A DNA stretch of 64,000 nt, from NCBI RefSeq assembly GCF_037042905.1, contig NC_087256.1:2170001-2234000 (forward strand). Reading direction: 5' to 3'. Source of the stretch: Lytechinus pictus. Its lineage: Eukaryota. How positions within the stretch are numbered: the first letter of the stretch is position 1; every line of letters begins with the position of its first letter. Shown here piece after piece: positions 6,879-48,330 of the stretch. A program made the position numbers and the translations under genes. The notes under the pieces were generated by a model that did not search any database, was not told where the DNA came from, and saw only the letters and a list, made by a program, of their open reading frames with translations.

Positions 6879-7570
6879 AAAACACACTCTTTTCATTATG
6901 TGCTCAGCATGATAAAACCATTGATCAGTGTACATGGTGAACTGTCCGCCTGGGGGAGGGGGGGGGGGGGTGAAAGGGAGGATCAATCTATCACAAGTAA
7001 TAATAGGCATATCATATAATTGAACCTTTAAGAATACAAACTTTGTTTTCAAGCTGATTTTAAGATTTAATATATTTCAACTCCCCATCAATCATTTCAG
7101 TCCATGTGTGTTTGTAAAATAATTGCTAGAATTCCAACTTTCCCTTAAACAGACACTATTTTGTGAGTAGAATGTAAATGTTTACACAATATTGTGCAGT
7201 CTATATGTAAGTCTTATTTTTTATCGTTTTACAGACTGCCAAAATTATAGAAAAGTGACAGGAGTTGGTTTGACATCTTTCACTTTCGTTAAAGTCAATA
7301 ATGAGCGTTCTTCACCTTCTTTTCATTTTTCTAAATTTCTTCAAATTATTTTGATAGCTGTTGACCTCTCAAATAATTTATATACCTCATCCATCAGCCC
7401 CTTCCCCCACACACATACACCCATCCATCCTCCCACCTGACTTCCACACACAATCATCCAATTTAAAACAGGTGACATTGAAATTGTATACAAAAGTGAA
7501 AAAATAAGAATGAATATATAAAAAAGAAAAAGGTTGAAAAACAGAAAGAGAAATCAAAGTAAGAGAGTAA

Positions 7571-7731
7571 TACCATGGTCACATTTGCTCTACGGCGGCC
7601 GTACGGCGAGTCGAAAACAGCCATCTTAACATTATCATACCAGCTACATATAGGTGGTTTGAATAAAAATAAATAAAACAGCCGTTTTCGACTCGCCGTA
7701 TGGCCGCCGTAGAGCAAATGTGACCGAAGTA
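7571..7731. mobile_element. Short palindromic PIF/Harbinger-like MITE
   Basis: ~40-bp inverted repeats (GGTCACATTTGCTCTACGGCGGCCGTACGGCGAGTCGAAAAC / GTTTTCGACTCGCCGTATGGCCGCCGTAGAGCAAATGTGACC), TAA duplication at 7568-7570 and 7732-7734; second copy at 32994-33154. Confidence 0.85.
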
Positions 7732-7774
7732 TAAGCAGTATCTTTGTGATCAGCAATAAAAAAAATGTGGTTCC

Positions 7775-7806
7775 TTGACAAAAAACACAGAAAGAATGTT
7801 TTTATT
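7775..7806 (-). terminator. Candidate distal cleavage/polyadenylation site of the zinc-finger gene
   Basis: Minus strand reads AATAAA (7806-7801) then AACATTCTTTC and a GU/U-rich element TGTGTTTTTTGT. Coincides with the change from CpG-poor to CpG-normal sequence. Confidence 0.55.
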
Positions 7807-8497
7807 TTACAGAGTATCTTTAATTAAATTTAATGTGTTTCTGGACTGTACATAGAAGGTATCGGCACTTGCACTGTATAAATATATATGATACATCTCC
7901 TGTGGGTGTGCATCGACATACCAAACACCTCTTAGTACAATGAATGAATAGACAAAACATAAACAGACACAAGCATGATTCGCAATATCATTTAGAAATG
8001 GAAAATAAGAGAAATAAATGTACAATCAGAATTGAATTCAGTATTGAAATATAAAACACAATTTCCTTCACCAATACTGAATATAACAATATCTTTTTCT
8101 TTTTCCCCTTATAATGGAGAGAATTATAGATCTGAGAGAGACGATTTAAAGAGGAAATAACAAAATAGAAGCACAACAAATACATCTTATTGATGTGTGA
8201 TTTTTTTTCATAATGAAATACACAAGACAAATACATCCTTTTCTTTCCCCATCATCCTGCAAAAAAATGTTTATATAAGGCATGGCAACCTTCCTGGAGT
8301 GAAATAAAATTCAAACATTAATTCATTCATAAATGAAATTACTGTAAGTTTCCTGGAAAATTCCCATTCATCTCCACGTAACATTGGTGCAGGATGTTGT
8401 CTCCTTGTCGTTCTTGATTGAACAAGGTTTACTCATCACAAGTTATGCAGTATGTAATCACAACTCCACCTGCATAATGAAATACATTCTTTACAAT

Positions 8498-8648
8498 CTG
8501 GGTATCATTCTTAAAGACTTGCTATGATGGCAAATAACACAATTTATGTAACAAATCTACTATCAACCAATCAGATTGAAGGACTTTAGTAGCTTTAAAC
8601 TATTATTGCAATTTGCTATTATAACAAGTTTTATGAAACATGTCCCAG
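8498..8648. mobile_element. Eroded short palindromic MITE
   Basis: Imperfect TIRs ctgggtatcattcttaaagacttg / caagttttatgaaacatgtcccag around a ccaatcag core. Confidence 0.55.
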
Positions 8649-10191
8649 ATGTGAAATTATCATACCCACAAAACCATGCCCTTAATCGCAGGTATGTAGG
8701 GAAAGACAAAAATGATCAAAAAACCATAAGGGCAATGGAATCTAATTAATTCAACAAGTTTGGCAACATACCAGTATCTTCGTCTCCTGTAGAAGGTACA
8801 AATAAGGTTCTTTCAATTTTTGAGTTGATGAGAACTCCCTGAGAAATACATGTATACATTGAGTTTAATACCCCATTTCTGGAACAAAAGAGGATCAAGT
8901 CCAATTTGAAAGAAAATAAATATGTTTTGGGGTATAGATACAACTGATTCCATTGCCTATATGTGTATTGTGAGCTAACATTAATTGATGTGGACAGTGA
9001 AACAATGCCCAAGACTTGGTAAAATACACTTAACAGTACAATTATTTCATTAGTGTGCTACAACTATACACAGCAGTATCGTGCTCCAAATCACACATTT
9101 AAATAGAGTCAAAGTCTTCCATTTTGTCTGTTACATTACACTACTGATACATGCTAAAGAACTTTCTCCAAGTCTGTTTATTAACAGGGTATCCTAATAG
9201 CACTAAAACTGCAAGAAGCTTGGAAAAAATGTAAAAGTAGAAAGAAAATAGCAAGCATGTTACACAGTATAAAATTGAATATATTCAACAAATGTACAAA
9301 TATAGTTGCGAGAAAAAGAAAAAAAGTCAGGATCCTTAACATAGGTACACACATATATATATAACACATAAACATATATATATACCTATATAAAGCCTGA
9401 ATTATGATATCCCTGAAATAACTCTCCAGTGAAACATCATATAACTTTTGTCATCACACATTACAACATGGGAAACAAAAGCATGCATAATACAAAAAAA
9501 GGCTCAGGTATTAATCTTAAACATATAGCATTTAGTCCCTGAGATACAATTAGGAAGGGATAATCAGAGAGAGGGGGTTCCCCGTAGGGTCCCTCGACAC
9601 CTGCCCCTCACAAAATAGTGTTTTTTTTCCCTTATCATCATGCACTTTACAAATGATTTTCTCTCAATACACAATCACTGGTTAATACTAGTTCACTCTA
9701 TACACACCGCTCTATCTACTCGTCCTACAATAATCTAACTTCCTAAAATGGATCATTAAATAGCCCATTCCCAACATAATCAAACCTGCCATTCAGTGTC
9801 TTCTCCCAATATTCATAAAAAGTACCAAATTCCTGAAGCTACACAGATGATTTTTTTTTCCAAAACGGCCCACATGGCAAATCTTTGAGGATTCCTTTGA
9901 GAATCATAAATATTTTCTTAAATATTATTTTTGAAGGATGTCTTTTTAAAATTGTTTATACAAGTAGAATAGCTTTCTAAAATGCATTTTTCCCTCTAGA
10001 CAATTCAAGAAGTAAAAATAATTCAGAAAAAAACCCAAATCATATTGACCATAAATATGAATGCTTTATTCAAAAACATTATCTTAGGGTTCTTTAAATG
10101 TTAGTATTTCCTCTTTGTTAAGCATTTTAAGATCAGCTATGAAACACTCTGGCCCTAGTTGTAAGTATACCCTAACTATTGAGATTGACAA

Positions 10192-10400
10192 TTAGGGTCA
10201 AGTCCATCTCAACAAGAAGTTTATTTGAATGAAAATACAAAAATCAAACAAGCATCAAGAAAGGTATGATAGCTTCAAGTCTCTAAACTTTAAAAATGTC
10301 ACAACTTTCTAATTTTACATCTGAAATCGATAGAATATATGGTGCTATTCTTGTCGATTTTTTTAGGTTTTGTATTCATTTGTCATTGGGGAGGACTTGG
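10192..10400. mobile_element. Internally deleted, eroded copy of the Kolobok-like MITE family A
   Basis: ggtcaagtccatctcaacaagaag..aaaatcaaacaagcat and aaatgtcacaactttctaattttacatc..ggggaggacttg match both ends of the 21144-21746 family. Confidence 0.65.
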
Positions 10401-13400
10401 ATTAGTTTTATTAAAAGTCTCAGTATTTTTAGCTGTGGCTTCTTTTTTTTAGCGTCTCTTAGCTTCAGATCCACTAGATGTAATCCCACAAATCAATTGT
10501 TAACTGGTTATATTTAACAGCTCATCCCCCTTAAATTCTTAAGAATATTATTGTAATTACTCAGTCATTGTGGTAGTACTGAAATCACAAAAACACCATC
10601 CTCATTGATACTAAACACATTTCTCTGCTTTCCCTTAAGAAAGTTTGTCAACCATTCCTAATATCATCATTAAAAATCAATAATCCCTTTATGCATGATA
10701 CGGGAGGTAATGCCCAATTAATAATAATAATAAATGGCTGAATGCTCTATATACTGAAAACAATTTGTTTGAAATCCAATCTGTGACTGACTTTACCTAC
10801 ACAATGGGTTAAAATAATATGAACAATCAATCATCATGAGATGGAAAACTTGAAAGCAAGTTTATACTGGCCATTGTTATAACATTGAATATGGCTGTGA
10901 AAATATACAAGGCTTGTTGATCAATATTGAGCAGTATGCAATCCATCTTATTAACAATTCATTACTTACTTGAGCTTTTCATTCAATATTTTTTTTTCAA
11001 AAAAAAAATATAATATGCGAAAAACACAACATGTACACTTTCTTGTGGTAACATTTTATTTCAATAGATTTTGCAGCATTTAAAACTAAAACCCTTGGGT
11101 ATAATCCCTAAACAAATGTGATCTTGGCTAGAATCATGTTCTTCTTTTCATACACTTCCAACAGAAGTACAAACATAATTATGTTTTTAGATGTACTTTG
11201 AGATCTGTTATATACCATAGGGCTCACATTCTAAACATACCAGAAAGGTTATACATCAATTACTAATGCTAATATAATACTCTACAATCTTATAACTTCA
11301 TTTCACTAACACATACATTGTGCTTGAAGCGAGAGCAAACAGTTCTATAATACACATGTACACATTCATCCAACCATGACACTGTTTGGTGAGAGATAAT
11401 GTCACATTTAAAATGGAAAAAACAATCATCTTTCCTGAAAAACCCCACAATGCCATGACCCAATTGAGTCTAGAGAAAAGAGAACAGTAACTAGAAAAAA
11501 AAAATGCATGTTGACAAAAAACAAACAAACTTATATTCCCTGCAGAAGTCCACAATACACCTACTATTCTTCCATTCATACAATCTCATACCTCTAAATT
11601 TTTAAAGGATAAACAAAATAAAATGCACTCAAATTACACTACGGTGGCTGAGAGATAGAGGTCTAATAATGGTCAATCAGAATCTCTCATATTTCAAATA
11701 GTTAGTGAGGTAGATTTTCAACAAATATCAAATATTTACATAGGCTACAAGAAGTACCCTCTAACAATTTTCATTAAAATCTCATTTACCAATAACATAG
11801 CAATATCATAATCTCAAAAAATCGACAAATCACAAGAGAATATATTAGTTTGATGTGATTCCTTTAAGTGAGGTGAAAATATTTAACATTTCTAAACACA
11901 GAATGAAGAGTTTACTATGTGTACAATTAAACCGACCACCTGTTGTCAAATTTCTATAAATAATGTAGTACAGAAAGTTGAAGAAAAAAAATCACAATTG
12001 TCTTCATAAAAAATTGAGAAACCAATGATTTGATGTTCGTTCTTATGGAAATTTGAAACCCACTTTGTGCAACATACTCATAAGTTATGTTTCCTCCAAA
12101 ATATATGAAATCATTTTATTACTGTTCCATACATTATTTGCAAAATAATGTATAATATGGCTTAATAAAGATGTGATACAAAGAGTGAGGTATTTTAGAC
12201 ATAATGCACTTTCCATTTTCATACTTTCTTCATTTTTCAATCATTGCAAATTTACAATTGAGGTAAAAGTGCTAGTAATAACCTCTTTCATAAATGAAAT
12301 GATGTGGAACTTTAGAACATGTGTTTGAAAAACTGCACAATGCCGCCAACATAATATTTGTATTGCCTTAATTCATTTATTTATTTATTTAGTTTTTAAT
12401 ACATGTCAACACTTGTCAAAAGGAAAATCAATTTTTGTTTTTTCCTTTTACATTGAAGCATCAGTCTTAAAGGACTGTAATTATACATTTCAAATTTACT
12501 ATAAAACAGAAGGGTTAATTATTTGTCTTTAATATCTAAGTAAAGCCAGATATGAGGTAGCATTCTTATGTACACAGCACATTCAACACCAGGAAAACAA
12601 AATAAGAAATAAAAACCCAATTAATTTTACAAATACATTAAAACACCTGTATTTTTCATGTGCTTTTAGACATATATGGACATTAGTACTACGTGAGTGA
12701 TAGCTGTTATATAATCAGTTTATGACTATAATGTATTCCCGATTGTATAATGCTATCACACTTTCACAAAACATCCAGGTACTTATAAAACAAAACAAAA
12801 AATGCCCCAAACCATAAAAAAAAAAAAAAAAAAGTTTAAATTGTATACTATGTAAGATAAACTTGAGTGCTGTTAACATTCAATTGCCCTTTTTAAAAAT
12901 CATATACTAAGTAGAGATGGTCATGAGAGATGATCTTTTTGTAAATTTGGGTACCTCTAGGTTTTATTTCAGAAGATATGCTGATATTTCCCTGAGATTA
13001 TAAATTCGATAATTGCAATTTAGTAAATGATGCCAGCTAATTTATCGGGTAAAACAGTGTACAATTCCCCATACAACAGATTGAGCGTGATATTCCCTGA
13101 TCATGATTAATGATCATATACCTTGTCAAAAAGAGGATTTCACTACTTGAAAAATATTGTATATAGGGGGAAAAATTTTACTTTTAATATAGCTAAAATG
13201 AGCACAACTGATGTTTTATTTTCTTGCTGCAGTAAAAATAAATGACAGAAGGACATAAATAAGAAGGAATTGTTAGGAGCTAGAACTAAAGATTTCAAGA
13301 GGGTGGATGGGCTTAAACTCAAGGGAAATCACCTTCAAGCTAAATTAGCTTTGGTAAATTCATTGTCAAATGAAGATCTGATCTAAATAAATAAATAAAC

Positions 13401-13907
13401 AAAGTACCTAAACTTTGAAGTTCCAAAATATCAATATCTTCTCCCTTTTTTTTTGGGGGGGGGGGGGCGGGGGAGGGGAATGAATTTACTTTTATATGCA
13501 TGTAATGAGGGGACAATTTCATGCAACATTTCTGATATTAGCTTATTCTGGAAATAACAGGTCAATAACACTGCTTACAGACCTGAATGTGATCAAAATG
13601 GTTGAATACAGATTACTACAGGGAATCATATTTACATTAATTGTCAGACATACAGGAGTCCAATATAATCTTTACCAAATCTCTACCAACATTTTACAGT
13701 ATATAGCTCAAATTTTTTCTGAGCAAAAAGGTATACAGATCACCAAAACCAACTTAAAATACCATGAAGGGAAATATCTTCTTCTTTTTTTTACATTAAA
13801 GAGCAACCCATTTTATGGTTGTTTTTGTTGTTGTTATACCCAAGGTATCTTTTCTGAGCTTCAAGATGATATGATCTTGTTCTGAAAAGTTAGAAAGGAT
13901 GGCCTGT

Positions 13908-13934
13908 ATATATATATTAAATATATATATATAT

Positions 13935-13965
<31 letters not shown>
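13908..13965. repeat. (TA)n microsatellite, interrupted
   Basis: Directly visible. Confidence 0.95.
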
Positions 13966-13970
<5 letters not shown>

Positions 13971-16900
13971 TGCTTTAAGAGACCAATCCACACTGAATGG
14001 ATCCAGATCTAACGGACCATTCCGATCAACAGGTCCAGTATGAATCGGTCCATGTGATTATCAGCTGGGTCTTTATCTTTCAAAGAGTATAGGCATAGGA
14101 TAGAGATGAGGTAGTTATTTAGTTAAGCAGTCTGATAATCCATTGGGCAAAAGTTTTGTTCTTTATTAATCCCTGAATACATAATGGACCAGGTGATATG
14201 ACAATAAATGCTTTCATAAAACTATAAAGAACCACAAGGTTATTTAGTAATTTTAAGTATGGAGTGGGACATTTCTCTGAATTGTATATATAGATTTTTA
14301 AATTGATACTAAAACATATTGGGCCAAAAGAAAAGTTTGGGGGAAAATAAGTAAAAAATAAACCATTTTTGGAAGTAGAAATAGAAATGAGTTGGCAATC
14401 TGATGGAGATGTATGTGTGTGTTATGACTAAAGGTTGTAGTAGTAGCAGCAGCAATGTGACCAACAGCATAGCTTTGATTTGAGCACTGAAAGCTACAAG
14501 CATGACATAGAAGCAAAAGCACAGAATGAACTCTTTGATGGGAGAACAAAAGTGTTTAAAAAAATGATGAAAAAAAAATCCCATTTAACCCTTTTATAAT
14601 ATCTCTTTTAAAGCCTACATGATTATACAGAATTGTTATTTGCAAGAATAATCTACAATTTTTTCTGTCTACTTATTCTAGGCAGCAGAAAGAGTGCATG
14701 CAGCATAAAGAAATATTTCTGAATAAAAATTGAAATGCAGCTAAAAAGAGAGAGCGAAAAAAAGACAAGTAAATGGGAAACAGACTCATTCAAATTCAGT
14801 TACTTATTTTTTTACAAGTTCTATAATACACAAAACATGTACAGTGTCTCCTTTTCATCATTCAAAGTTCTCAGACAATGAATGTTATTTCCTGTTTCCC
14901 ATAGAATATGCAATATGGTCAAAATAGTATCAAATTCGCTTACCAGCCATCTCATGTACTGATCATGAGTCAGGATTCATGTCAAAATGTTATCTAATCA
15001 ATGAAATTTAGAGGAAACAACATCAAAATTATTGATAGATATCACAGACGGGAAGGTATTTTGACAAATTTCAGAATAAGTATTCACTAACATGACAAAG
15101 CATGATGTATTCAACAAGACCCACAAACAAGTACCCGTAATCACTTTATTTTTTTTTATTCTTGATTGGGATCTAGCTTTTATAGTCCTGCAGTGAGCAA
15201 GTGAGCTAGACATGTAGAAATCTTTTATTCATTTATATTTCAGTTTCTTGCAGCCTGAGATTTTTCAAAATGTACATCTTCTAAAAATTTATGCAAGACA
15301 ATCTGATCAACAGTGTATCGCATATATACACTAATCAAGTAAGAGGGAGTTGGTTCGATGGAAAAAATATAGAATGCGAAAATTTTGACTGTTAAAACTT
15401 ATCAGGTAAAATAAGACATTGTTAGTTAGGGGGTTAATCACTGTTTTTTTTTTAAGAACTCAATACACAAAAAAATTGACTTTCATTTCAGCTAACCATT
15501 TTATCCTCCTCATCATAATGATTGTTGAGTTGGTGACAAGGGCTGTGTGATAGTTGTAATAAAATGTGATTTTATTAAATATTTTTATTACCTTCACACA
15601 TTCCCCCAATTCCTTTTACGTGTACTATACACTTTTATATAGCACTGGATATTAAAAAGAAAAAGATTAGCAATTGTGTGAGATAGTAATAAAAATAATT
15701 CATTTTAAAGTGGCGACAGGTGAAAAATAATTTTGATTGGCTTAGGAGCATCTATCACTGACTTGTTACTAGAGTAACTGTTGTAGAGAACTACATCTTG
15801 TCAGTGCTGCAAAGCTTCATTAAATGGTGCAAAGCTCGTTATTTCGGTAGTTGTTAACTTGTTGCTATATCAGACAAGTTCTAAAAGGATGCAAAAATAT
15901 AAACATGAAGCATGTGTGACCTGCTTGTCTGTGCAATATGTGAAACTAGTAAAATGACTTTTAAGAAATGATCAACAAAGCTGTCTTTAAATGCAGAGTG
16001 CAACATGTAAACAACAAGAAAAAAGGGAGTTGGGGTGGGTAGAAATTTTCAGAGGGGTGGAGAGGGAAGATGAGGGGTAAAAATATATTGAGTGGAAGGA
16101 TAAAAGGAAAAGGATTACTTTTCTCATTTTTTCTTTGGCAGACAGAATTTGCCGAAGATCAATTCAAGACTGATCGATGACTTTGAGAAGCACAATCAAA
16201 GTTTCATGAATCTGGACTCTCTTATTCTCACTGCAGCTGGTATAGTAGCCACAGCTTCTGATTCAAAGATGACGTTTTAAGTTCTAAACGAACCAGGATA
16301 TTATTCATGAATAACCTTAGCCAATTGTGTCTTCATTGCAAATAAGCTCTTTGGCTAGCACTGATCAGGCATAGGCTTAGAACCTGGCTAAAGGAACTCA
16401 AGATTTTATTCCTTCAGTTAGCTGATACCTATCCCCATCTCCTTATATTCTGAAGGGAAAGAGTTCCTTTATGATTCAACTTGTAACAATTATTTAGTTA
16501 AAGTACCTTATGTTTGATCCTATACCCTGTATCCTATTTAGAGGGCATGTCTTAGTGATCTGAATTTGGAAGTGTGGGGCAGTTATTAAGGGGTGAAATT
16601 AAATCTTGATAAATGTTCTCATTTTGGTTTGAAGTATCATTAAGAAAAGAGAGAAAAAAAGAAGAAGAGGGAATGAGAAGAAAAAAAAGTATGTCAGGAG
16701 CAAGGGCATTGAATCATCAGCCAGGCAGGATATGAACTTGGTGTAAAAGGAGCCCCTGTGAAGCAAGCAGAGCTAAATTTATAACTATCCCCTGTACATG
16801 ACCTTGCTATTATGACTGTCCATTTCCTCAAGAGTAAAAAGCCCAAGTATATAAACATGAACAAGTGAGAAGAAGGGGCCAAAGCCTGACACAAAATAAC

Positions 16901-18738
16901 ACATTGCATTATGATAGGAGATCATAATTGTGTTTAAAAAAAAATAGAGCATGTGTAAAAGGGCTGCTCATAAAACTACCATGTTTCCAAGAGGTACCAG
17001 AAGCTCTGTTACAAGTCTTAAGACTTGTGAGTGTGAGTGAGCAGTCCTGAGCAATGAAACAGCTTCATCGCTCAGATTCAAGACTTATGCATTTTGATGA
17101 GAAAAGTATCTCCTTCATCTGGCACTGCTGATGAAGTACAATTGGAAGAATTAGGTTGAGGGATCAGATTATGGGAGAGAAGGATTATGGCAAAGCATTA
17201 GAAGAAATGTTTATCTCATCTTAATATTATGTATGCATACATTCATGGTGGATCAGTGAGGGATTGTGTAGCAATGTATGCATGATGAGGCAATCTATAC
17301 AACACTAAATTTAGGACATGAAATTAGAGTAAGAAGGAAAGCAAGAAAACTCAGGATTGCTGCAGATTGTCACAATCTCTTGGCTCATGGAACAGTGAGC
17401 AAAAACAAAAACAGGAGAGAAAAAGGACAGTAAGAGATCGGGGGGAGGAGAGATGAGAGAAGAACAGAAAATAAGTAATCCTATTAAAGATCACAGTTAA
17501 TGTGCAAAACACAAAACCAGAAATGGACCTAATGCGTAGTAATTTACAGGTACATATGTGATTTGATTGCTCAATAAACAGGTTTGCTAAGCTTGTTCAA
17601 ATTTATGAACATTTAATTTCTATGGCCCAACCCAAAATATATGTACCATAAATGCTTAAATGATATCTAGTTTGTATTACTTGTTGGTTGCTATATCTGG
17701 CAAGCCTCTGGCATGCACTAGGGTTATCGGGTTGCTTACAAAAGTATACGAGAAAGGAATAGGTTTAGTAAATAAAGGTTTGTGAATTGGGTATTTTGGC
17801 TTGTTTTACAGCGGTTTTTAGGTCATTCATCTGCTTAATTTTTTTTTGTGATAAAAGACATGATTTAAATTGGAAGGGATGGGAGTTCACTGTTCTTTAT
17901 ATAATAGCCAAAACTTTATAAATGAATTAATATTTATAGATATTCTTAATCTACTGACAGAAGAAAAAGGCAACTTCTGCAGAATGATACTGTAATGTTT
18001 TACTTCCATTTTTGAGGTTTGTTAGTTGATATCACATTTGAGGTTGAAAGGTTTTGAGGATCATGCATTCTATAATACTTGGTAGTGTGAAATCACACTA
18101 TGATGAAAAGATATTTTACGGAAAACCCCCCATAAGGGTTGTTAAATATTAGAGTAACACATCTACAATATAATCTACTAATCATCACTACTACAATGAG
18201 GTATAATAACAATAATAAATGTTAAAAAATTTACAATACTCATTATGAAATCCTGACTTAAAAATCACAAATATGAAAGCCTGAAATAGGCCCAAAATAG
18301 ATATATACTTACTGATTTGAGGAAATAAATCCAGATATGTTTTTTTTTATCTCTAGGTACTTAGCATATAAATGTATATGTGTAGTGCACATAAGAAATA
18401 TTCTCATTGGATATAAAAGTATAAAACTATAACAGTAGTTCTCCTGATAAGACTTTGCTTGAACAAAATAAAATGCAAGCACTTGTTGATTTTTTGTCTC
18501 GAATGATTTCAATACACTTGATAATACACATTTTACATGATAAAATAGACAGTAATTGCAGTTTGACAAATAAGCTTGCGCTAAAAGTATAACATGGAAC
18601 ATTTCGACACATAATAGTCAAAAACACTTATATTTCATATATTTTGCACCCGCATCATAAAATGTTTTAAGTTCAAAGCTCCAACACCTACTTAAAAGTG
18701 ACAAAGTAATATTTTAGATATTTCATGGCTTGAAAGCA

Positions 18739-20832
18739 TTACCTGACATGTTGGCTTCGAGTCACGTGACAAGTGAACTCTATCTTGTCCCGACAGACGT
18801 AGCCGCATATGCTGCACTGGAAAGGATGTCTTGTGCCATGACAGCTCATGTGCAGAGTAAAGATGACATGATCGGTAAAGAAGGTCTCGCAGTGAGGACA
18901 TTTGACAGCCTGGTGAGGGATGCCCACTGGATCACCTCCCATCCATTCCGTCTGTGCTTGGCCGTCGATCTTGCCATCTTCTTCACCACCGCTACTGCTG
19001 CTGCTCTTGTTGCCCTTGTCTGCCGCCTGTGGGCCAGAGGTAGATATTTCACCATTGTTGGTCACCACTTCACCTTCATAAATTCCTTGCTTGAAGTACC
19101 TCTGCGTGTGACCAGCGTTTTCGTCTGAGTCTGGTGTCACATCACCAGGGGATCTCAGATTCTGGCCAACTCCATGAGGATACTTGTACATGTTTTGGTC
19201 ATGTGGAGAGCCCGGCACGTCAACACCATTGACCATTGCCTGATGATGGAATGCAGGCATGACCCCTTCTGCTTTGACTCCAAGAGGGTGATTAGCTTCA
19301 CTGGCATATGCTGCTGCTACATGACCTTCTGTGTTGGGTACATCAGACCTGGTATCAATCCAGAGCTCTGTACCATGCTCTTGTTCTGGTGACATAACCA
19401 GCTCCCTCTTTGGAAAGGGTGTCCTCTTCCGCTTCCTGGCACCGCCCTCCTTCTTGCGTCTAAAGATTGGAAAGTTGGCCCAATGAGGCGCATTTTCGTT
19501 GGGATGAAGAGGTTGAGGAGATATAGATGTATTTGAAATGACAGAGTTCATTGTGTTATTGACCATGCTACCCACCAGAGAGCCAGGTGTGATGTTACCT
19601 GATCTAGAAGGGGCACTATGGTTGCTATCACTTTCATGGACATCCCGGGAAGGTAGATGTGGTGAGGGGTTGCCCGGGAGGTCCGGTGTATCCTGGGATG
19701 GCATTTCCTGAGGTTGACCCGTACTTGATCCTGGACTTGTCTTCTGGGGACTTAGTGTTTCTGAGGAGGCTATTTCTGAATGAGGTAGAGAAATATTTGA
19801 ATGTTTTACAATCTTGCCATTGCCCATCTCCATTTCCCTAATGCTATTGTCTGAGCCATCATAGGGGCTGTGTTCTTGCATGGACAATGCATGAGATAAA
19901 GAAGGGGGGCCATTATCAAAACTTCCTGAGGTATCTAAGACTGGTTTGCCTTCACTGGTATAGAGAGGGGCCTTGTACAGCCCTTCTTCTGAAGGTGAGG
20001 AGATATTATTTTGAGCACTGAAAGGCGGCGAGCTATCTTCCGTCATGGACAACGGTGGCAACGGTGCCCCATTGACATCAACATTATTATGGCGCTTACG
20101 ACGATGCGCTTGCAGGTTGCATTTGTAGGGCGTCTGGTAGTGGCACTGGTCACACTTGAACTGCTTACTGGTGCCAGTGTGGACGATCAAGTGCCTCATT
20201 AGGCTGCTTCGGAAGGCACTGCTGAAGCCACAAACCAGGCACTTGTAGGGCTTCTTCCCTGAATGAACATTCATGTGCTCATTTAAGTGTGTCTTGGTAG
20301 GAGAAATGTGTGTACACAGCTTACACTGGTACACTCGTCCATGTTCAGAAAATGGTGAAAGGGCGCTTAAGGAGTTGAGACCTTCCATGGTTGGAGGGGG
20401 ACCTGAGGTAGATACATGCAAGGGAATGCCTCGACTCACTTCCGGCATGAGGGGCGGGGGCAGGTCTCTTATTTTATTAATGTCTGGCATGCGACGATCA
20501 ATTAAGATGGAACTCGTCATATCGACCCTGTGGACTGCCAGATGCTGCTGTAACGTACTATGTAATGAACAACTGAAGCCGCACTCTAAACACTGGTATG
20601 GGCGCGAACCTGTATGAATGTTCATATGTTCATCGAAAGCAGCTTGTGTGGACGCAATAAACGTACAGAGTTGGCACTGGTACCCTTGACTTGGCTTACG
20701 AGGGCTTACACCAGGAGAGGTATTCTGTTGTACTTCTGGAGGTGGTGTTCCTGTGGAATCCTCACCAATACTGGAATGACTAGAGCTACTGCGGGATGAC
20801 CCAACTGTTTGCAATCTTTCTTTGTCAGCCAT
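18739..20832 (-). CDS. IKZF5: Ikaros/Hunchback-family C2H2 zinc-finger transcription factor, most like Pegasus (IKZF5); 697 aa, 7 fingers (2+3+2)
   Basis: Open 697-aa ORF. Fingers at aa 51-101 (two), aa 168-~248 (three, last ending NLQAHRRKRH) and a C-terminal pair CPHCETFFTDHVIFTLHMSCHGTRHPFQCSICGYVCRDKIEFTCHVTRSQH typical of the Ikaros/Hunchback dimerisation domain. Basic NLS-like RRKK..RKRKR and SUMO-consensus VKAE. In-frame TGA directly before the ATG fixes the start. Family is secure; exact IKZF5 orthology comes from recalled sequence similarity and needs a phylogeny. Confidence 0.9.
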   Translation of the reverse strand: MADKERLQTVGSSRSSSSHSSIGEDSTGTPPPEVQQNTSPGVSPRKPSQGYQCQLCTFIASTQAAFDEHMNIHTGSRPYQCLECGFSCSLHSTLQQHLAVHRVDMTSSILIDRRMPDINKIRDLPPPLMPEVSRGIPLHVSTSGPPPTMEGLNSLSALSPFSEHGRVYQCKLCTHISPTKTHLNEHMNVHSGKKPYKCLVCGFSSAFRSSLMRHLIVHTGTSKQFKCDQCHYQTPYKCNLQAHRRKRHNNVDVNGAPLPPLSMTEDSSPPFSAQNNISSPSEEGLYKAPLYTSEGKPVLDTSGSFDNGPPSLSHALSMQEHSPYDGSDNSIREMEMGNGKIVKHSNISLPHSEIASSETLSPQKTSPGSSTGQPQEMPSQDTPDLPGNPSPHLPSRDVHESDSNHSAPSRSGNITPGSLVGSMVNNTMNSVISNTSISPQPLHPNENAPHWANFPIFRRKKEGGARKRKRTPFPKRELVMSPEQEHGTELWIDTRSDVPNTEGHVAAAYASEANHPLGVKAEGVMPAFHHQAMVNGVDVPGSPHDQNMYKYPHGVGQNLRSPGDVTPDSDENAGHTQRYFKQGIYEGEVVTNNGEISTSGPQAADKGNKSSSSSGGEEDGKIDGQAQTEWMGGDPVGIPHQAVKCPHCETFFTDHVIFTLHMSCHGTRHPFQCSICGYVCRDKIEFTCHVTRSQHVR

Positions 20833-46974: not shown

Positions 46975-48330
46975 AAACAAGTGGAATGCCTCATACCCTT
47001 TTCATAAACCCAATAAAACCTATCCTCCAATTAGCCGCCTAAGAGTAATGCGAATAATTCAATAAAAATTGCGTTCACAAACTCCGTAAATTATCCGCAT
47101 TATTTTTACGAGCGCCCGTCCTGAAAAAGGCGAATAATCGTCATGACAACTGGACACGCCCCCTCCGATGCGGTTGTGTTGGAAAAGGGTGACCTTGTGA
47201 CCGCACCATGGCAATTATCCGCATTATTTGGAAATACGTTCATAAACTCAAAATCTTGTCCCGATGCCGCTATTATGCGGATAATAGCAGCATCAGAATA
47301 ATGCGGATAACTCTTGTCCTCCTCTGATTTTACGACCAAATTATGCTGCTATTAGCCGCATAATTGGGTTTTATTGGGTTTATGAAAGGGGTATCAGGCA
47401 GTCTTGCCTGCATTACATTATTCCATATAGCAATAGTGCTGACTTTGAAAACAGCTATTTAATAATAATTCACAAAAGAAACACTGATATGATATCAAAA
47501 TACTATGTCCATGGACCCAACATGACCTTTGACCATAAACATGAGCAGAACATACTTGATAACCCTTATGTTTATGTTTCAATTACATGAGTAGATCCAT
47601 ATACTTTCTAAGTCATGATGCCAATTCAACACATACCCACAACACGGCAACATTGAACTTAAATGACCTTTGATCTTGGTCATGTGACCTGAAACACACT
47701 TAATTCAGGGATACATGGTTTCTCTTATGTCCAAGTTTCATGAACTAGATCCATAAACTTTTGAAGTTATGATGACAATTCCACAAATATCCCAAACATT
47801 ATGAAAGTTTGTTGACCCTAAATGACCTTTGACCTTGATCATGTGACCTGAAACTCACACAGGATGTTCGGTGATACTTGCTCTTATGTCTTAGTTTCAC
47901 AAACTAGATCCATAAATTTTTCAAAGTTATGACAATTCACGAATACTTCAACACGGTCAAAGTTTGTTGACCCTAAAAGACCTTTAACATTGGTCATGTG
48001 ACCTGAAACTTAAGCAGGTTCTTTAGTGATACATTATTACCCGTATGTCTAAGTTTCATGTACTAGGTCCACATACTTTCTAAGTAATGACAACATTTCA
48101 AAAACTTAACCTTGGTTAAGATTTCGATATTGATTCCCCCAAACATGGTCTAAGTTCTTTGACCTAGGTTATGTGACCTGAAACTAAGGCAGGATGTTCA
48201 GTCATACTTGATTACCCTTATGTCCAAGTTTCATGAACTAGGTTCATATACTTTTTAAGTTATGATGACATTTCTAAAACTTAACCTTGGTTAAGATTTC
48301 AATGTTGATGACCCTGCCGCCGCTGTCGGA
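46975..48330 (+). mobile_element. Helentron/DINE-like family H1 copy, interrupted near its start and lacking the terminal hairpin
   Basis: aaacaagtggaatgcctca|..|ggcagtcttgcctgcat rejoins to the H1 start; same internal repeats. Confidence 0.8.
46994..47393. mobile_element. Young Harbinger-like MITE
   Basis: TIRs TACCC(T/C)TTTCATAAACCCAATAAAACC, 3-bp duplication TCA (46991-46993, 47394-47396), CpGs still abundant. Confidence 0.88.

What the first reader, a model, noticed from the sequence alone, without database searches (positions are those of the whole stretch)
8836..18203. Heterochronic-type miRNA module: clustered let-7 and miR-125/lin-4 sites (plus miR-100) downstream of a Hunchback/Ikaros-family gene
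Seen, on the mRNA (minus) strand, plus-strand coordinates given. let-7 8mers CUACCUCA at 11706-11713, 12553-12560, 14107-14114, and 7mer-A1 sites starting at 12186, 12259, 18197. miR-125/lin-4 8mers CUCAGGGA at 8836-8843, 9536-9543, 12989-12996 (all three also pair to miRNA nt 9), and 7mer-A1 sites starting at 9410, 13094, 14170. One miR-100 8mer UACGGGUA at 15132-15139. By eye I found neither the let-7 nor the miR-125 8mer on the opposite strand of this interval, nor on the mRNA strand of the 43 kb upstream. A rough estimate at ~33% GC is about 0.05-0.1 chance occurrences per 8mer in 11 kb, against three of each observed. Established: miR-100, let-7 and miR-125 form an ancestral bilaterian cluster; C. 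elegans hunchback-like hbl-1 is repressed through its 3' UTR by let-7-family miRNAs and lin-4; Hunchback and Ikaros act as early temporal-identity factors. Inference: this gene is a temporally switched-off target of the let-7 cluster (e.g. at metamorphosis or in neural progenitors), a conserved or convergent heterochronic circuit that I do not know to be described for this gene.
Basis: partly seen in the sequence, partly recalled or inferred. Interest (0 to 1): 0.9.

Follow-up and report, generated by a model that had tools for sequence, protein, structure and literature searches.

The report
let-7/miR-125 sites in urchin Ikaros UTR
A sea urchin Ikaros-family transcription factor gene has a ~10.9 kb 3' UTR carrying unusually many binding sites for the let-7, miR-125 and miR-100-like microRNAs, and most are preserved across sea urchins, so this looks like a deuterostome counterpart of the nematode let-7/lin-4 control of hunchback-like hbl-1.

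Summary
Every listed site is at its coordinates on the minus (mRNA) strand.

- **Gene:** a single-exon CDS (20832..18739, 697 aa), 98% identical to the L. variegatus "ikaros family zinc finger protein-like". Its C-terminal finger pair is 49% identical to a vertebrate Ikaros.
- **Transcript:** stranded RNA-seq shows minus-strand RNA from 12999 down to an end at about 7810, just after poly(A) signals. RNA-derived contigs also hold 13000-18999. The 3' UTR is therefore about 10.9 kb.
- **Enrichment:** let-7 and miR-125 8mers occur three times each, against 0.12 and 0.06 expected (0 of 4000 dinucleotide shuffles). None is on the antisense strand. They rank first and second among 29 urchin miRNA seeds.
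- **Conservation:** in S. purpuratus, 6 of the 7 8mers sit at aligned positions, against a 12% background.
- **Wider echinoderms:** Diadema has three UTR let-7 8mers. Three sea stars share a miR-125 8mer about 190 nt after the stop. Two further let-7 8mers lie in the CDS.
- **miRNA genes:** the genome encodes mir-2003 (a miR-100 homolog with the seed intact), let-7 and miR-125 on one strand of one contig.

Actual repression and its timing remain inferred. Two hemichordate Pegasus-like genes lack the sites, so ancestry beyond echinoderms is open.

The parts
18739..20832 (-). Single-exon CDS (697 aa) of an Ikaros-family C2H2 zinc-finger protein: five N-terminal/middle fingers and two fingers at the extreme C-terminus. 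Stop codon TAA at 18739-18741.
   Evidence: 98% identity to the L. variegatus 'ikaros family zinc finger protein-like'. C-terminal pair 49% identical to Pogona Ikaros; nearest non-echinoderm hits are Pegasus-like, Eos and Ikaros.
7810..18738 (-). 3' UTR of about 10.9 kb.
   Evidence: stranded RNA-seq, minus-strand RNA only, from about 7810 to 12999, and zero depth at 7000-7399; 13000-18999 held at 0.54-0.82 by RNA-derived contig sets; identity to L. variegatus is 0.83-0.98 per 500-nt bin through 7742 and 0.52 beyond. Collinear conserved blocks in S. purpuratus reach 7804.
7801..7834 (-). Poly(A) signals: ATTAAA at 7829-7834 and 7819-7824, AATAAA at 7801-7806. RNA 3' ends lie at about 7810-7841.
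   Evidence: one contig ends at 7810 and another at 7841; read ends pile up at 7818.
11706..11713 (-). let-7 8mer, conserved in L. variegatus and S. purpuratus within a conserved block.
12553..12560 (-). let-7 8mer, conserved in L. variegatus and S. purpuratus; the 3' flank has diverged in S. purpuratus.
14107..14114 (-). let-7 8mer, conserved in L. variegatus and unalignable in S. purpuratus. S. purpuratus has a 7mer-m8 in the syntenic interval (L002:17711).
12186..12192 (-). let-7 7mer-A1, conserved in L. variegatus and S. purpuratus. Further 7mer-A1 sites at 12259-12265 and 18197-18203 are conserved only in L. variegatus.
19781..19788 (-). let-7 8mer inside the CDS (CDS position 1045), conserved through Diadema with diverged flanks.
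20404..20411 (-). let-7 8mer inside the CDS (CDS position 422), conserved through Diadema with diverged flanks.
8836..8843 (-). miR-125 8mer plus nt-9 pairing, conserved in L. variegatus and S. purpuratus.
9536..9543 (-). miR-125 8mer plus nt-9 pairing, conserved in L. variegatus and S. purpuratus.
12989..12996 (-). miR-125 8mer plus nt-9 pairing, conserved in S. purpuratus as an island with diverged flanks.
9410..9416 (-). miR-125 7mer-A1, conserved in L. variegatus and S. purpuratus. The 7mer-A1 sites at 13094-13100 and 14170-14176 are not conserved in S. purpuratus.
15132..15139 (-). 8mer for the miR-100 seed (carried here by mir-2003-5p), conserved in L. variegatus and S. purpuratus.

Best explanation
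The roughly 13 kb mRNA of this sea urchin Ikaros-family transcription factor is a direct, multi-site target of the three microRNAs of the ancestral let-7 complex. In this genome these are mir-2003 (the miR-100 homolog), let-7 and miR-125, all on one strand of one contig.

Proposed mechanism: Argonaute loaded with these miRNAs binds three let-7 8mers, three miR-125 8mers (each extended to nt 9), one miR-100-seed 8mer, several 7mers in the 3' UTR, and two let-7 8mers in the CDS. Binding lowers mRNA stability and translation.

Mature let-7 is scarce in urchin embryos and abundant in adult tissue. The likely outcome is therefore that the factor is made early (embryo, larva or progenitor cells) and shut off where and when the cluster turns on. 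That is the same logic as let-7-family/lin-4 repression of hunchback-like hbl-1 in C. elegans.

- **Shown here:** site presence, strand specificity, enrichment, conservation, transcription of the region, and presence of the miRNA genes.
- **Inferred:** repression itself, its timing and its tissue.
For: - **Sites and enrichment:**. Three 8mers each against 0.06-0.12 expected; 0 of 4000 shuffles; none on the antisense strand.
- **Rank:** first and second among 29 urchin miRNA seeds. CTCAGGGA is one of only 5 of 8766 8mers with three or more copies conserved in all three species.
- **Positional conservation:** in S. purpuratus, let-7 2 of 3, miR-125 3 of 3 and miR-100 1 of 1, against a background of 12.1%. 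That is about 2e-5 under a binomial model.
- **Island pattern:** flanks have diverged at 12989, at 12553 and at both CDS sites.
- **Recurrence across echinoderms:**
  - Diadema has three UTR let-7 8mers against 0.13 expected.
  - Patiria, Asterias and Acanthaster share a miR-125 8mer about 190 nt after the stop.
  - The sea stars carry their own CDS let-7 8mers.
- **Transcription:** stranded RNA-seq and RNA contigs cover the UTR on the right strand, ending at poly(A) signals.
- **miRNA genes (G000 contig C8, + strand):**
  - let-7 at 32628025.
  - miR-125 at 32629079.
  - mir-2003 at 32601213, with 5p seed ACCCGUA.
- **Literature:**
  - Mature let-7 is nearly absent from urchin embryos (PMC3247247).
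  - let-7 and miR-125 are abundant in adult tube feet (PMC6039759).
  - hbl-1 is repressed by let-7 through its 3' UTR (PMC4973599).
Against: - No functional data: no reporter, CLIP, or paired miRNA/mRNA time course.
- Continuity of one transcript from the CDS to 7810 is not proven. Read depth is uneven (12-38x at 8200-10000 against 1-6x at 10800-12999). Annotated isoforms in relatives splice out part of the proximal UTR.
- Single 8mers would not survive correction over all 65,536 8mers. Significance depends on the prior hypothesis, on the miRNA-seed panel, and on conservation.
- Two hemichordate Pegasus-like genes show no such sites.
- No miR-125 8mer was found in the 10 kb fetched from Diadema. 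That UTR is about 1.75 times longer, so the equivalent zone lies beyond the flank.
- Very long UTRs generally dampen per-site efficacy (my own knowledge).
Confidence: 0.7

Rival explanations
1. The matches are incidental. The UTR is constrained for other reasons (RNA-binding-protein motifs, structure, localisation elements), and the seed matches are carried along inside conserved blocks.
For: Several sites sit in blocks of high conservation: 11706, 8836, 9536 and 15132. Other unexplained 8mers are conserved just as repeatedly: TGTATTAT four times and ATTTGTTG three times.
Against: It does not explain the count enrichment (0 of 4000 shuffles each) or the complete absence of sites on the antisense strand. 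It does not explain island conservation with diverged flanks (12989, 12553, CDS sites). It does not explain independent, non-orthologous sites in Diadema and sea stars. Nor does it explain why the three enriched or conserved seeds belong to one genomic miRNA cluster.
Confidence: 0.1
2. The sites are real miRNA-binding sites, but the distal region acts as a separate RNA. This could be an independent or cleaved 3' UTR-derived transcript or lncRNA that sponges let-7/miR-125, rather than a control on the Ikaros protein.
For: Depth is higher at 8200-10000 than at 10800-12999 in two rRNA-depleted libraries, and there is a depth step at about 11983 in one contig set. No read-level link to the CDS was obtained.
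Against: No promoter or other gene is evident. One contig runs uninterrupted over 8611-12796. The same RNA contig sets hold 13000-18999. Annotated isoforms in relatives extend 3-3.7 kb past the stop. Let-7 8mers inside the CDS argue that the coding mRNA itself is targeted.
Confidence: 0.08
3. The module is a lineage-specific echinoderm acquisition, convergent with C. elegans hbl-1, rather than a retained ancestral bilaterian circuit. This rival concerns the evolutionary reading only, not the mechanism.
For: No sites occur downstream of the two hemichordate Pegasus-like genes. Site positions turn over between urchins, Diadema and sea stars. In mouse retina, let-7/miR-125 do not appear to regulate Ikaros directly; only Ikzf3 and Ikzf5 have conserved miR-125 sites (PMC3760135).
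Against: Site turnover with retained targeting is common for old miRNA-target pairs (my own knowledge). The hemichordate genes may be a different paralog. The same cluster-target pairing is seen in nematodes and echinoderms, and miR-125 sites occur in vertebrate Ikzf3/5.
Confidence: 0.5

Closest known systems
C. elegans hbl-1 (hunchback-like) 3' UTR, repressed by let-7-family miRNAs and lin-4 (Abrahante 2003 and Lin 2003, as cited in PMC4973599)
   Same: A Hunchback/Ikaros-type zinc-finger factor whose 3' UTR carries multiple sites for both let-7 and lin-4/miR-125. The miRNAs are temporally regulated.
   Different: This is a deuterostome Ikaros-family gene. The UTR is far longer (about 10.9 kb). 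There is also a site for the miR-100 homolog and let-7 sites in the CDS. No functional or timing data exist.
Vertebrate Ikaros family (Ikzf1-5) as temporal identity factors in retina and cortex
   Same: The C-terminal finger pair is homologous (49% identity). Ikaros is controlled post-transcriptionally in retinal progenitors, and conserved miR-125 sites are reported in Ikzf3 and Ikzf5 (PMC3760135).
   Different: Direct let-7/miR-125 control of Ikzf1 has not been shown in vertebrates. The urchin gene has a 2+3+2 finger layout and a single-exon CDS.
let-7 complex (mir-100/let-7/mir-125 cluster) and its Drosophila targets such as chinmo and abrupt
   Same: Co-transcribed cluster members jointly target one transcription factor mRNA.
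   Different: The target family differs. In urchins the miR-100 member has diverged into mir-2003 (PMC3384580) while keeping the seed. It lies 26.8 kb upstream of let-7.

Membership tests
Ikaros (IKZF) zinc-finger family | Two C2H2 fingers at the extreme C-terminus (the dimerisation pair) with family-specific sequence. | tested here: met
   An exhaustive HMMER search with residues 630-697 was run. Ten C-terminally placed non-echinoderm hits were looked up. Eight are named Pegasus-like (hemichordates), Eos or Ikaros (vertebrates) or 'ikaros family' (hagfish), and two carry no name. E-values were 1e-25 to about 1e-15. Identity to the Pogona Ikaros C-terminus is 49%.
Ikaros (IKZF) zinc-finger family | An N-terminal cluster of DNA-binding C2H2 fingers. 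| tested here: met
   Pfam C2H2 hits at residues 51-101 and 168-250. The layout is 2+3 fingers rather than the four of vertebrate Ikaros.
Ikaros (IKZF) zinc-finger family | Orthology shown by phylogeny, and which IKZF paralog group it belongs to. | not tested
   No tree was built. Naming of echinoderm orthologs by the sources is inconsistent: ikaros-like, ZNF335-like, sal-like.
Hunchback | NF/MF/CF finger blocks and Hunchback-specific boxes, with best reciprocal similarity to protostome Hunchback. | tested here: inconclusive
   The 2+3+2 finger layout resembles Hunchback's 2+4+2 (my own knowledge). None of the 10 looked-up C-terminal hits was a Hunchback. Homology between Hunchback and Ikaros is taken from the literature (PMC3760135).
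Canonical animal miRNA target site | A perfect match to miRNA nt 2-8 plus A opposite nt 1 (8mer), or a 7mer variant. | tested here: met
   The mature let-7 and miR-125 sequences were found in the same genome.
Canonical animal miRNA target site | The site lies in the mature mRNA, on the sense strand. | tested here: met
   Stranded RNA-seq covers 7810-12999 with no sense-strand splice joints. The region 13000-18999 is held by RNA contig sets. A single-molecule link to the CDS has not been shown.
Canonical animal miRNA target site | The cognate miRNA is encoded by the same genome. | tested here: met
   let-7 hairpin scoring 52.4 bits; miR-125 as an exact 22-mer; mir-2003 hairpin with 5p seed ACCCGUA. 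All are on contig C8, + strand.
Canonical animal miRNA target site | Preferential conservation above the UTR background. | tested here: met
   Six of seven 8mers are conserved in S. purpuratus, against a 12.1% background.
Canonical animal miRNA target site | miRNA-dependent repression. | not testable with these tools
   This needs reporters, inhibitors or target protectors, or AGO-CLIP.
Heterochronic let-7/lin-4 to hunchback-like circuit | The miRNAs rise late in development and the target falls in response. | not tested
   Literature only. Mature let-7 is nearly absent from S. purpuratus embryos (PMC3247247), and let-7 and miR-125 are abundant in adult tube feet (PMC6039759). No stage series of the target was examined.

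The most novel reading that the evidence does not exclude
The pairing of the let-7 complex (miR-100/let-7/miR-125) with a Hunchback/Ikaros-family temporal factor is an ancestral bilaterian timing circuit, retained in echinoderms with all three cluster members co-targeting one mRNA. Sea urchins would then be the first deuterostome in which the nematode hbl-1 logic can be tested directly, for example at the larva-to-juvenile transition.
Probability: 0.3. Interest if true: 0.8.

Novelty: new member of a known kind. Interest (0 to 1): 0.62.

Why it matters
Hunchback and Ikaros specify early temporal identity in fly and mouse neural progenitors. In C. elegans, hunchback-like hbl-1 is switched off by let-7-family miRNAs and lin-4. 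Whether this miRNA-to-Ikaros link exists in deuterostomes has been raised but not shown: in mouse retina, let-7/miR-125 do not seem to hit Ikaros directly (PMC3760135, PMC4973599).

A sea urchin Ikaros gene with enriched, conserved sites for every member of the let-7 cluster gives a concrete and experimentally tractable case. Urchin embryos largely lack mature let-7, so mimics, target-protector morpholinos and UTR reporters are straightforward. This makes the question of ancestry versus convergence testable across echinoderms.

I found no paper describing this in the searched library.

Tried and rejected
- **miR-100 search.** The canonical miR-100 22-mer was not found at up to 3 mismatches, apart from miR-10. 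Rfam found no mir-10-family hairpin within 20 kb upstream of let-7. A weak match at C8:32627441 does not fold as a hairpin. This was resolved through the literature: the homolog is mir-2003 (PMC3384580). Its published 3p sequence (PMC6039759) matches exactly 26.8 kb upstream of let-7, and the 5p arm keeps the miR-100 seed.
- **Protein family assignment.**
  - The PDB sequence search was uninformative, returning generic C2H2 hits such as CTCF and ZNF568.
  - The word-indexed search with the C-terminal domain returned only echinoderms.
  - The exhaustive HMMER search was needed.
- **Crinoids.** The orthologs P0013 and P0014 had no retrievable loci.
- **Diadema.** The miR-125 zone could not be reached. 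The UTR is about 1.75 times longer and flanks are capped at 10 kb.
- **Hemichordates.** The Pegasus-like genes have no let-7 or miR-125 8mers in the 10 kb downstream. This serves as a negative control and limits the ancestry claim.
- **Repeat artefact rejected.** The site contexts are unrelated to each other. The repeats flagged by read mapping (7400-7800, 8610-8640, 10285-10320) do not contain the sites.
- **Earlier scan notes.** A word search returned nothing.

Full report
**Observation**

A script on the window reproduced every site at the stated coordinates on the minus strand.
- There are three let-7 8mers, three miR-125 8mers and one miR-100 8mer, plus the listed 7mer-A1 sites.
- Each miR-125 8mer is preceded by T, which extends pairing to miRNA nt 9.
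All four lie inside the coding sequence.
- Outside this gene, the whole 64 kb window on both strands holds one let-7 8mer and no miR-125 8mer.

**The gene**

The minus strand carries a 697-aa open reading frame at 20832..18739 with C2H2 fingers. It is 98% identical to the Lytechinus variegatus "ikaros family zinc finger protein-like", 88% to the S. purpuratus ortholog and 71% to Diadema. Sea star and crinoid orthologs also exist.

A search of the last 68 residues against 1.84 billion representatives, followed by a name look-up, placed the C-terminal finger pair with the Ikaros family. The hits are hemichordate Pegasus-like proteins, vertebrate Eos and Ikaros, and a hagfish "ikaros family" protein. 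In each the match sits at the C-terminus. Identity to a lizard Ikaros C-terminus is 49%. The PDB sequence search was uninformative.

**Extent of the 3' UTR**

Comparative evidence:
- Against L. variegatus, the window aligns as one 12.8 kb block at 91% identity from 21080 to 8545, then 90.8% over 8487-7735. Identity collapses below about 7740.
- Against S. purpuratus, collinear conserved blocks run from the stop codon to 7804.
- ATTAAA and AATAAA signals lie at 7801-7834.

RNA evidence:
- Two stranded, rRNA-depleted RNA-seq runs were laid on 7000-12999. They give reads of one orientation only (first mate on +, meaning minus-strand RNA in the usual stranded protocol) from about 7810 to 12999.
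- There are no sense-strand splice joints, and depth is zero at 7000-7399.
- Two contig sets end at 7810 and 7841, and one contig spans 8611-12796.
- The same contig sets hold 54-82% of the sampled words of 13000-18999. They hold nothing at 7000-7399, so they are RNA-derived.

The UTR is therefore about 10.9 kb. This agrees with an earlier scan note on the same stretch.

Caveats:
- Depth is higher at 8200-10000 than at 10800-12999.
- No single molecule links the CDS to the distal end.
- The stop codon sits inside a consensus 5' splice site. NCBI isoforms X1 of S. purpuratus and L. variegatus splice from there to non-orthologous downstream exons. Such isoforms would drop the proximal 2.5-3.7 kb, which includes the 18197 site and probably 15132. 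They would keep all the let-7 and miR-125 8mers.

**Enrichment**

| Site | Observed | Expected (Markov-1) | Shuffle mean | Shuffles reaching observed |
|---|---|---|---|---|
| let-7 8mer | 3 | 0.112 | 0.118 | 0 of 4000 |
| miR-125 8mer | 3 | 0.064 | 0.063 | 0 of 4000 |
| miR-100 8mer | 1 | 0.014 | 0.014 | 56 of 4000 |
| let-7, all site types | 6 | – | 0.85 | 3 of 4000 |
| miR-125, all site types | 6 | – | 0.52 | 0 of 4000 |

- The antisense strand has no site of any type.
- Among all 8mers, CTCAGGGA ranks 6th and CTACCTCA 11th, behind only low-complexity words and shifted versions of themselves.
- As single words among 65,536 these ranks would not be significant.
- Against a panel of 29 sea urchin miRNA seeds taken from a published table (PMC6039759), miR-125 and let-7 rank first and second.

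**Conservation**

In a three-species alignment of the UTR, S. purpuratus shows the following.
- It keeps let-7 8mers 11706 and 12553, and the 7mer-A1 at 12186.
- It keeps all three miR-125 8mers with their nt-9 T, and the 7mer-A1 at 9410.
- It keeps the miR-100 8mer.
- The 14107 site falls in an unalignable stretch, where S. purpuratus has a 7mer-m8 (L002:17711).

Only 12.1% of window 8mers are perfectly conserved in S. purpuratus. Six of seven is therefore about 2e-5 under a binomial model. Sites 12989 and 12553 are islands with diverged flanks. CTCAGGGA is one of only five 8mers out of 8766 with three or more copies conserved in all three species.

Deeper relatives:
- **Diadema.** The UTR is collinear but about 1.75 times longer. 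It holds three let-7 8mers (0.13 expected) that cannot be aligned. The miR-125 zone lies beyond the retrievable flank.
- **Sea stars.** Patiria, Asterias and Acanthaster share a miR-125 8mer about 190 nt after the stop, within a conserved block next to a let-7 6mer. Patiria and Acanthaster each have a second miR-125 8mer further downstream.
- **Coding-region sites.**
  - The two urchin let-7 8mers are conserved through Diadema, where the CDS 8mer background is 11.9%, and their flanks have diverged.
  - Sea stars carry let-7 8mers at different CDS positions, one shared by all three.
  - One is a composite CTACCTCAGGGA that overlaps a miR-125 8mer.
  - Expected counts per CDS are 0.03-0.08.
- **Hemichordates.** Two Pegasus-like genes have no such sites in the 10 kb downstream.

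**The microRNAs**

- The genome encodes let-7 (G000 C8:32628025) and, 1 kb downstream on the same strand, an exact miR-125.
- Canonical miR-100 is absent at up to 3 mismatches.
- Hertel et al. (PMC3384580) state that the urchin miR-100 ortholog has diverged and is recorded as mir-2003.
- The published miR-2003-3p sequence (PMC6039759) matches exactly at C8:32601213, 26.8 kb upstream of let-7 on the same strand.
- The hairpin's 5p arm retains the seed ACCCGUA.

So the miR-100-type 8mer has a plausible cognate. This holds provided the mature 5' end is where the homology suggests, which was not verified.

**Timing**

This part rests on the literature only.
- Mature let-7 was undetectable by northern blot and gave only 16 reads in S. 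purpuratus embryos (PMC3247247).
- let-7 and miR-125-5p are abundant in adult tube feet (PMC6039759).
- This fits an early-on, late-off target but is not a test.

**Comparison and novelty**

The mechanism is ordinary miRNA targeting. The closest precedent is C. elegans hbl-1 (PMC4973599). For vertebrate Ikaros a miRNA link is suspected but not shown. Conserved miR-125 sites are reported only for Ikzf3 and Ikzf5 (PMC3760135). Searches found no paper on an echinoderm Ikaros gene and let-7.

I rate this a new member of a known kind. Confidence is fairly high that the sites are under selection as miRNA targets. Confidence is moderate to low that the circuit is ancestral rather than echinoderm-specific.

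Noticed in passing
window 9487, 11347, 14823, 18521 (minus strand): The 8mer TGTATTAT has four copies conserved in the window species, L. variegatus and S. purpuratus, the most of any 8mer in the UTR. ATTTGTTG has three. No regulator was assigned.
   Followed up: no
window 12965 and 15236 (minus strand): Two 8mers for the urchin-specific miR-2007 seed (CTGAAATA), both conserved in S. purpuratus. There are also five 7mer-A1 sites, three of them conserved. This is the third-ranked seed in the panel, but the word is AT-rich.
   Followed up: partly
window ~7400-7800; also 8610-8640 and 10285-10320: An interspersed repeat lies directly downstream of the poly(A) site. It draws reads on both strands and summed contig depth above 1700. 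Small related pieces inside the UTR produce a spurious 7727-to-10285 joint.
   Followed up: no
window 18739-18745 (minus strand): The stop codon TAA lies inside a consensus 5' splice site (AG|GTAATG). Annotated X1 isoforms in S. purpuratus and L. variegatus splice from here to different, non-orthologous downstream exons, giving alternative C-termini.
   Followed up: partly
L014 CDS position 1951 (Patiria); L018 (Acanthaster): A composite site CTACCTCAGGGA in which a let-7 8mer and a miR-125 8mer overlap by four bases, inside the sea star coding sequence. Acanthaster has CTACCTCAGGGG.
   Followed up: no
G000:C12:18480461-18480483: A second sequence resembling miR-2003-3p (3 mismatches), on the window's own contig 16 Mb away. 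It does not fold into the same hairpin.
   Followed up: partly
window 48038-48045 (minus strand): A second miR-100-seed 8mer, about 27 kb upstream of the CDS on the mRNA strand. Whether it lies in an intron or 5' exon is unknown.
   Followed up: no
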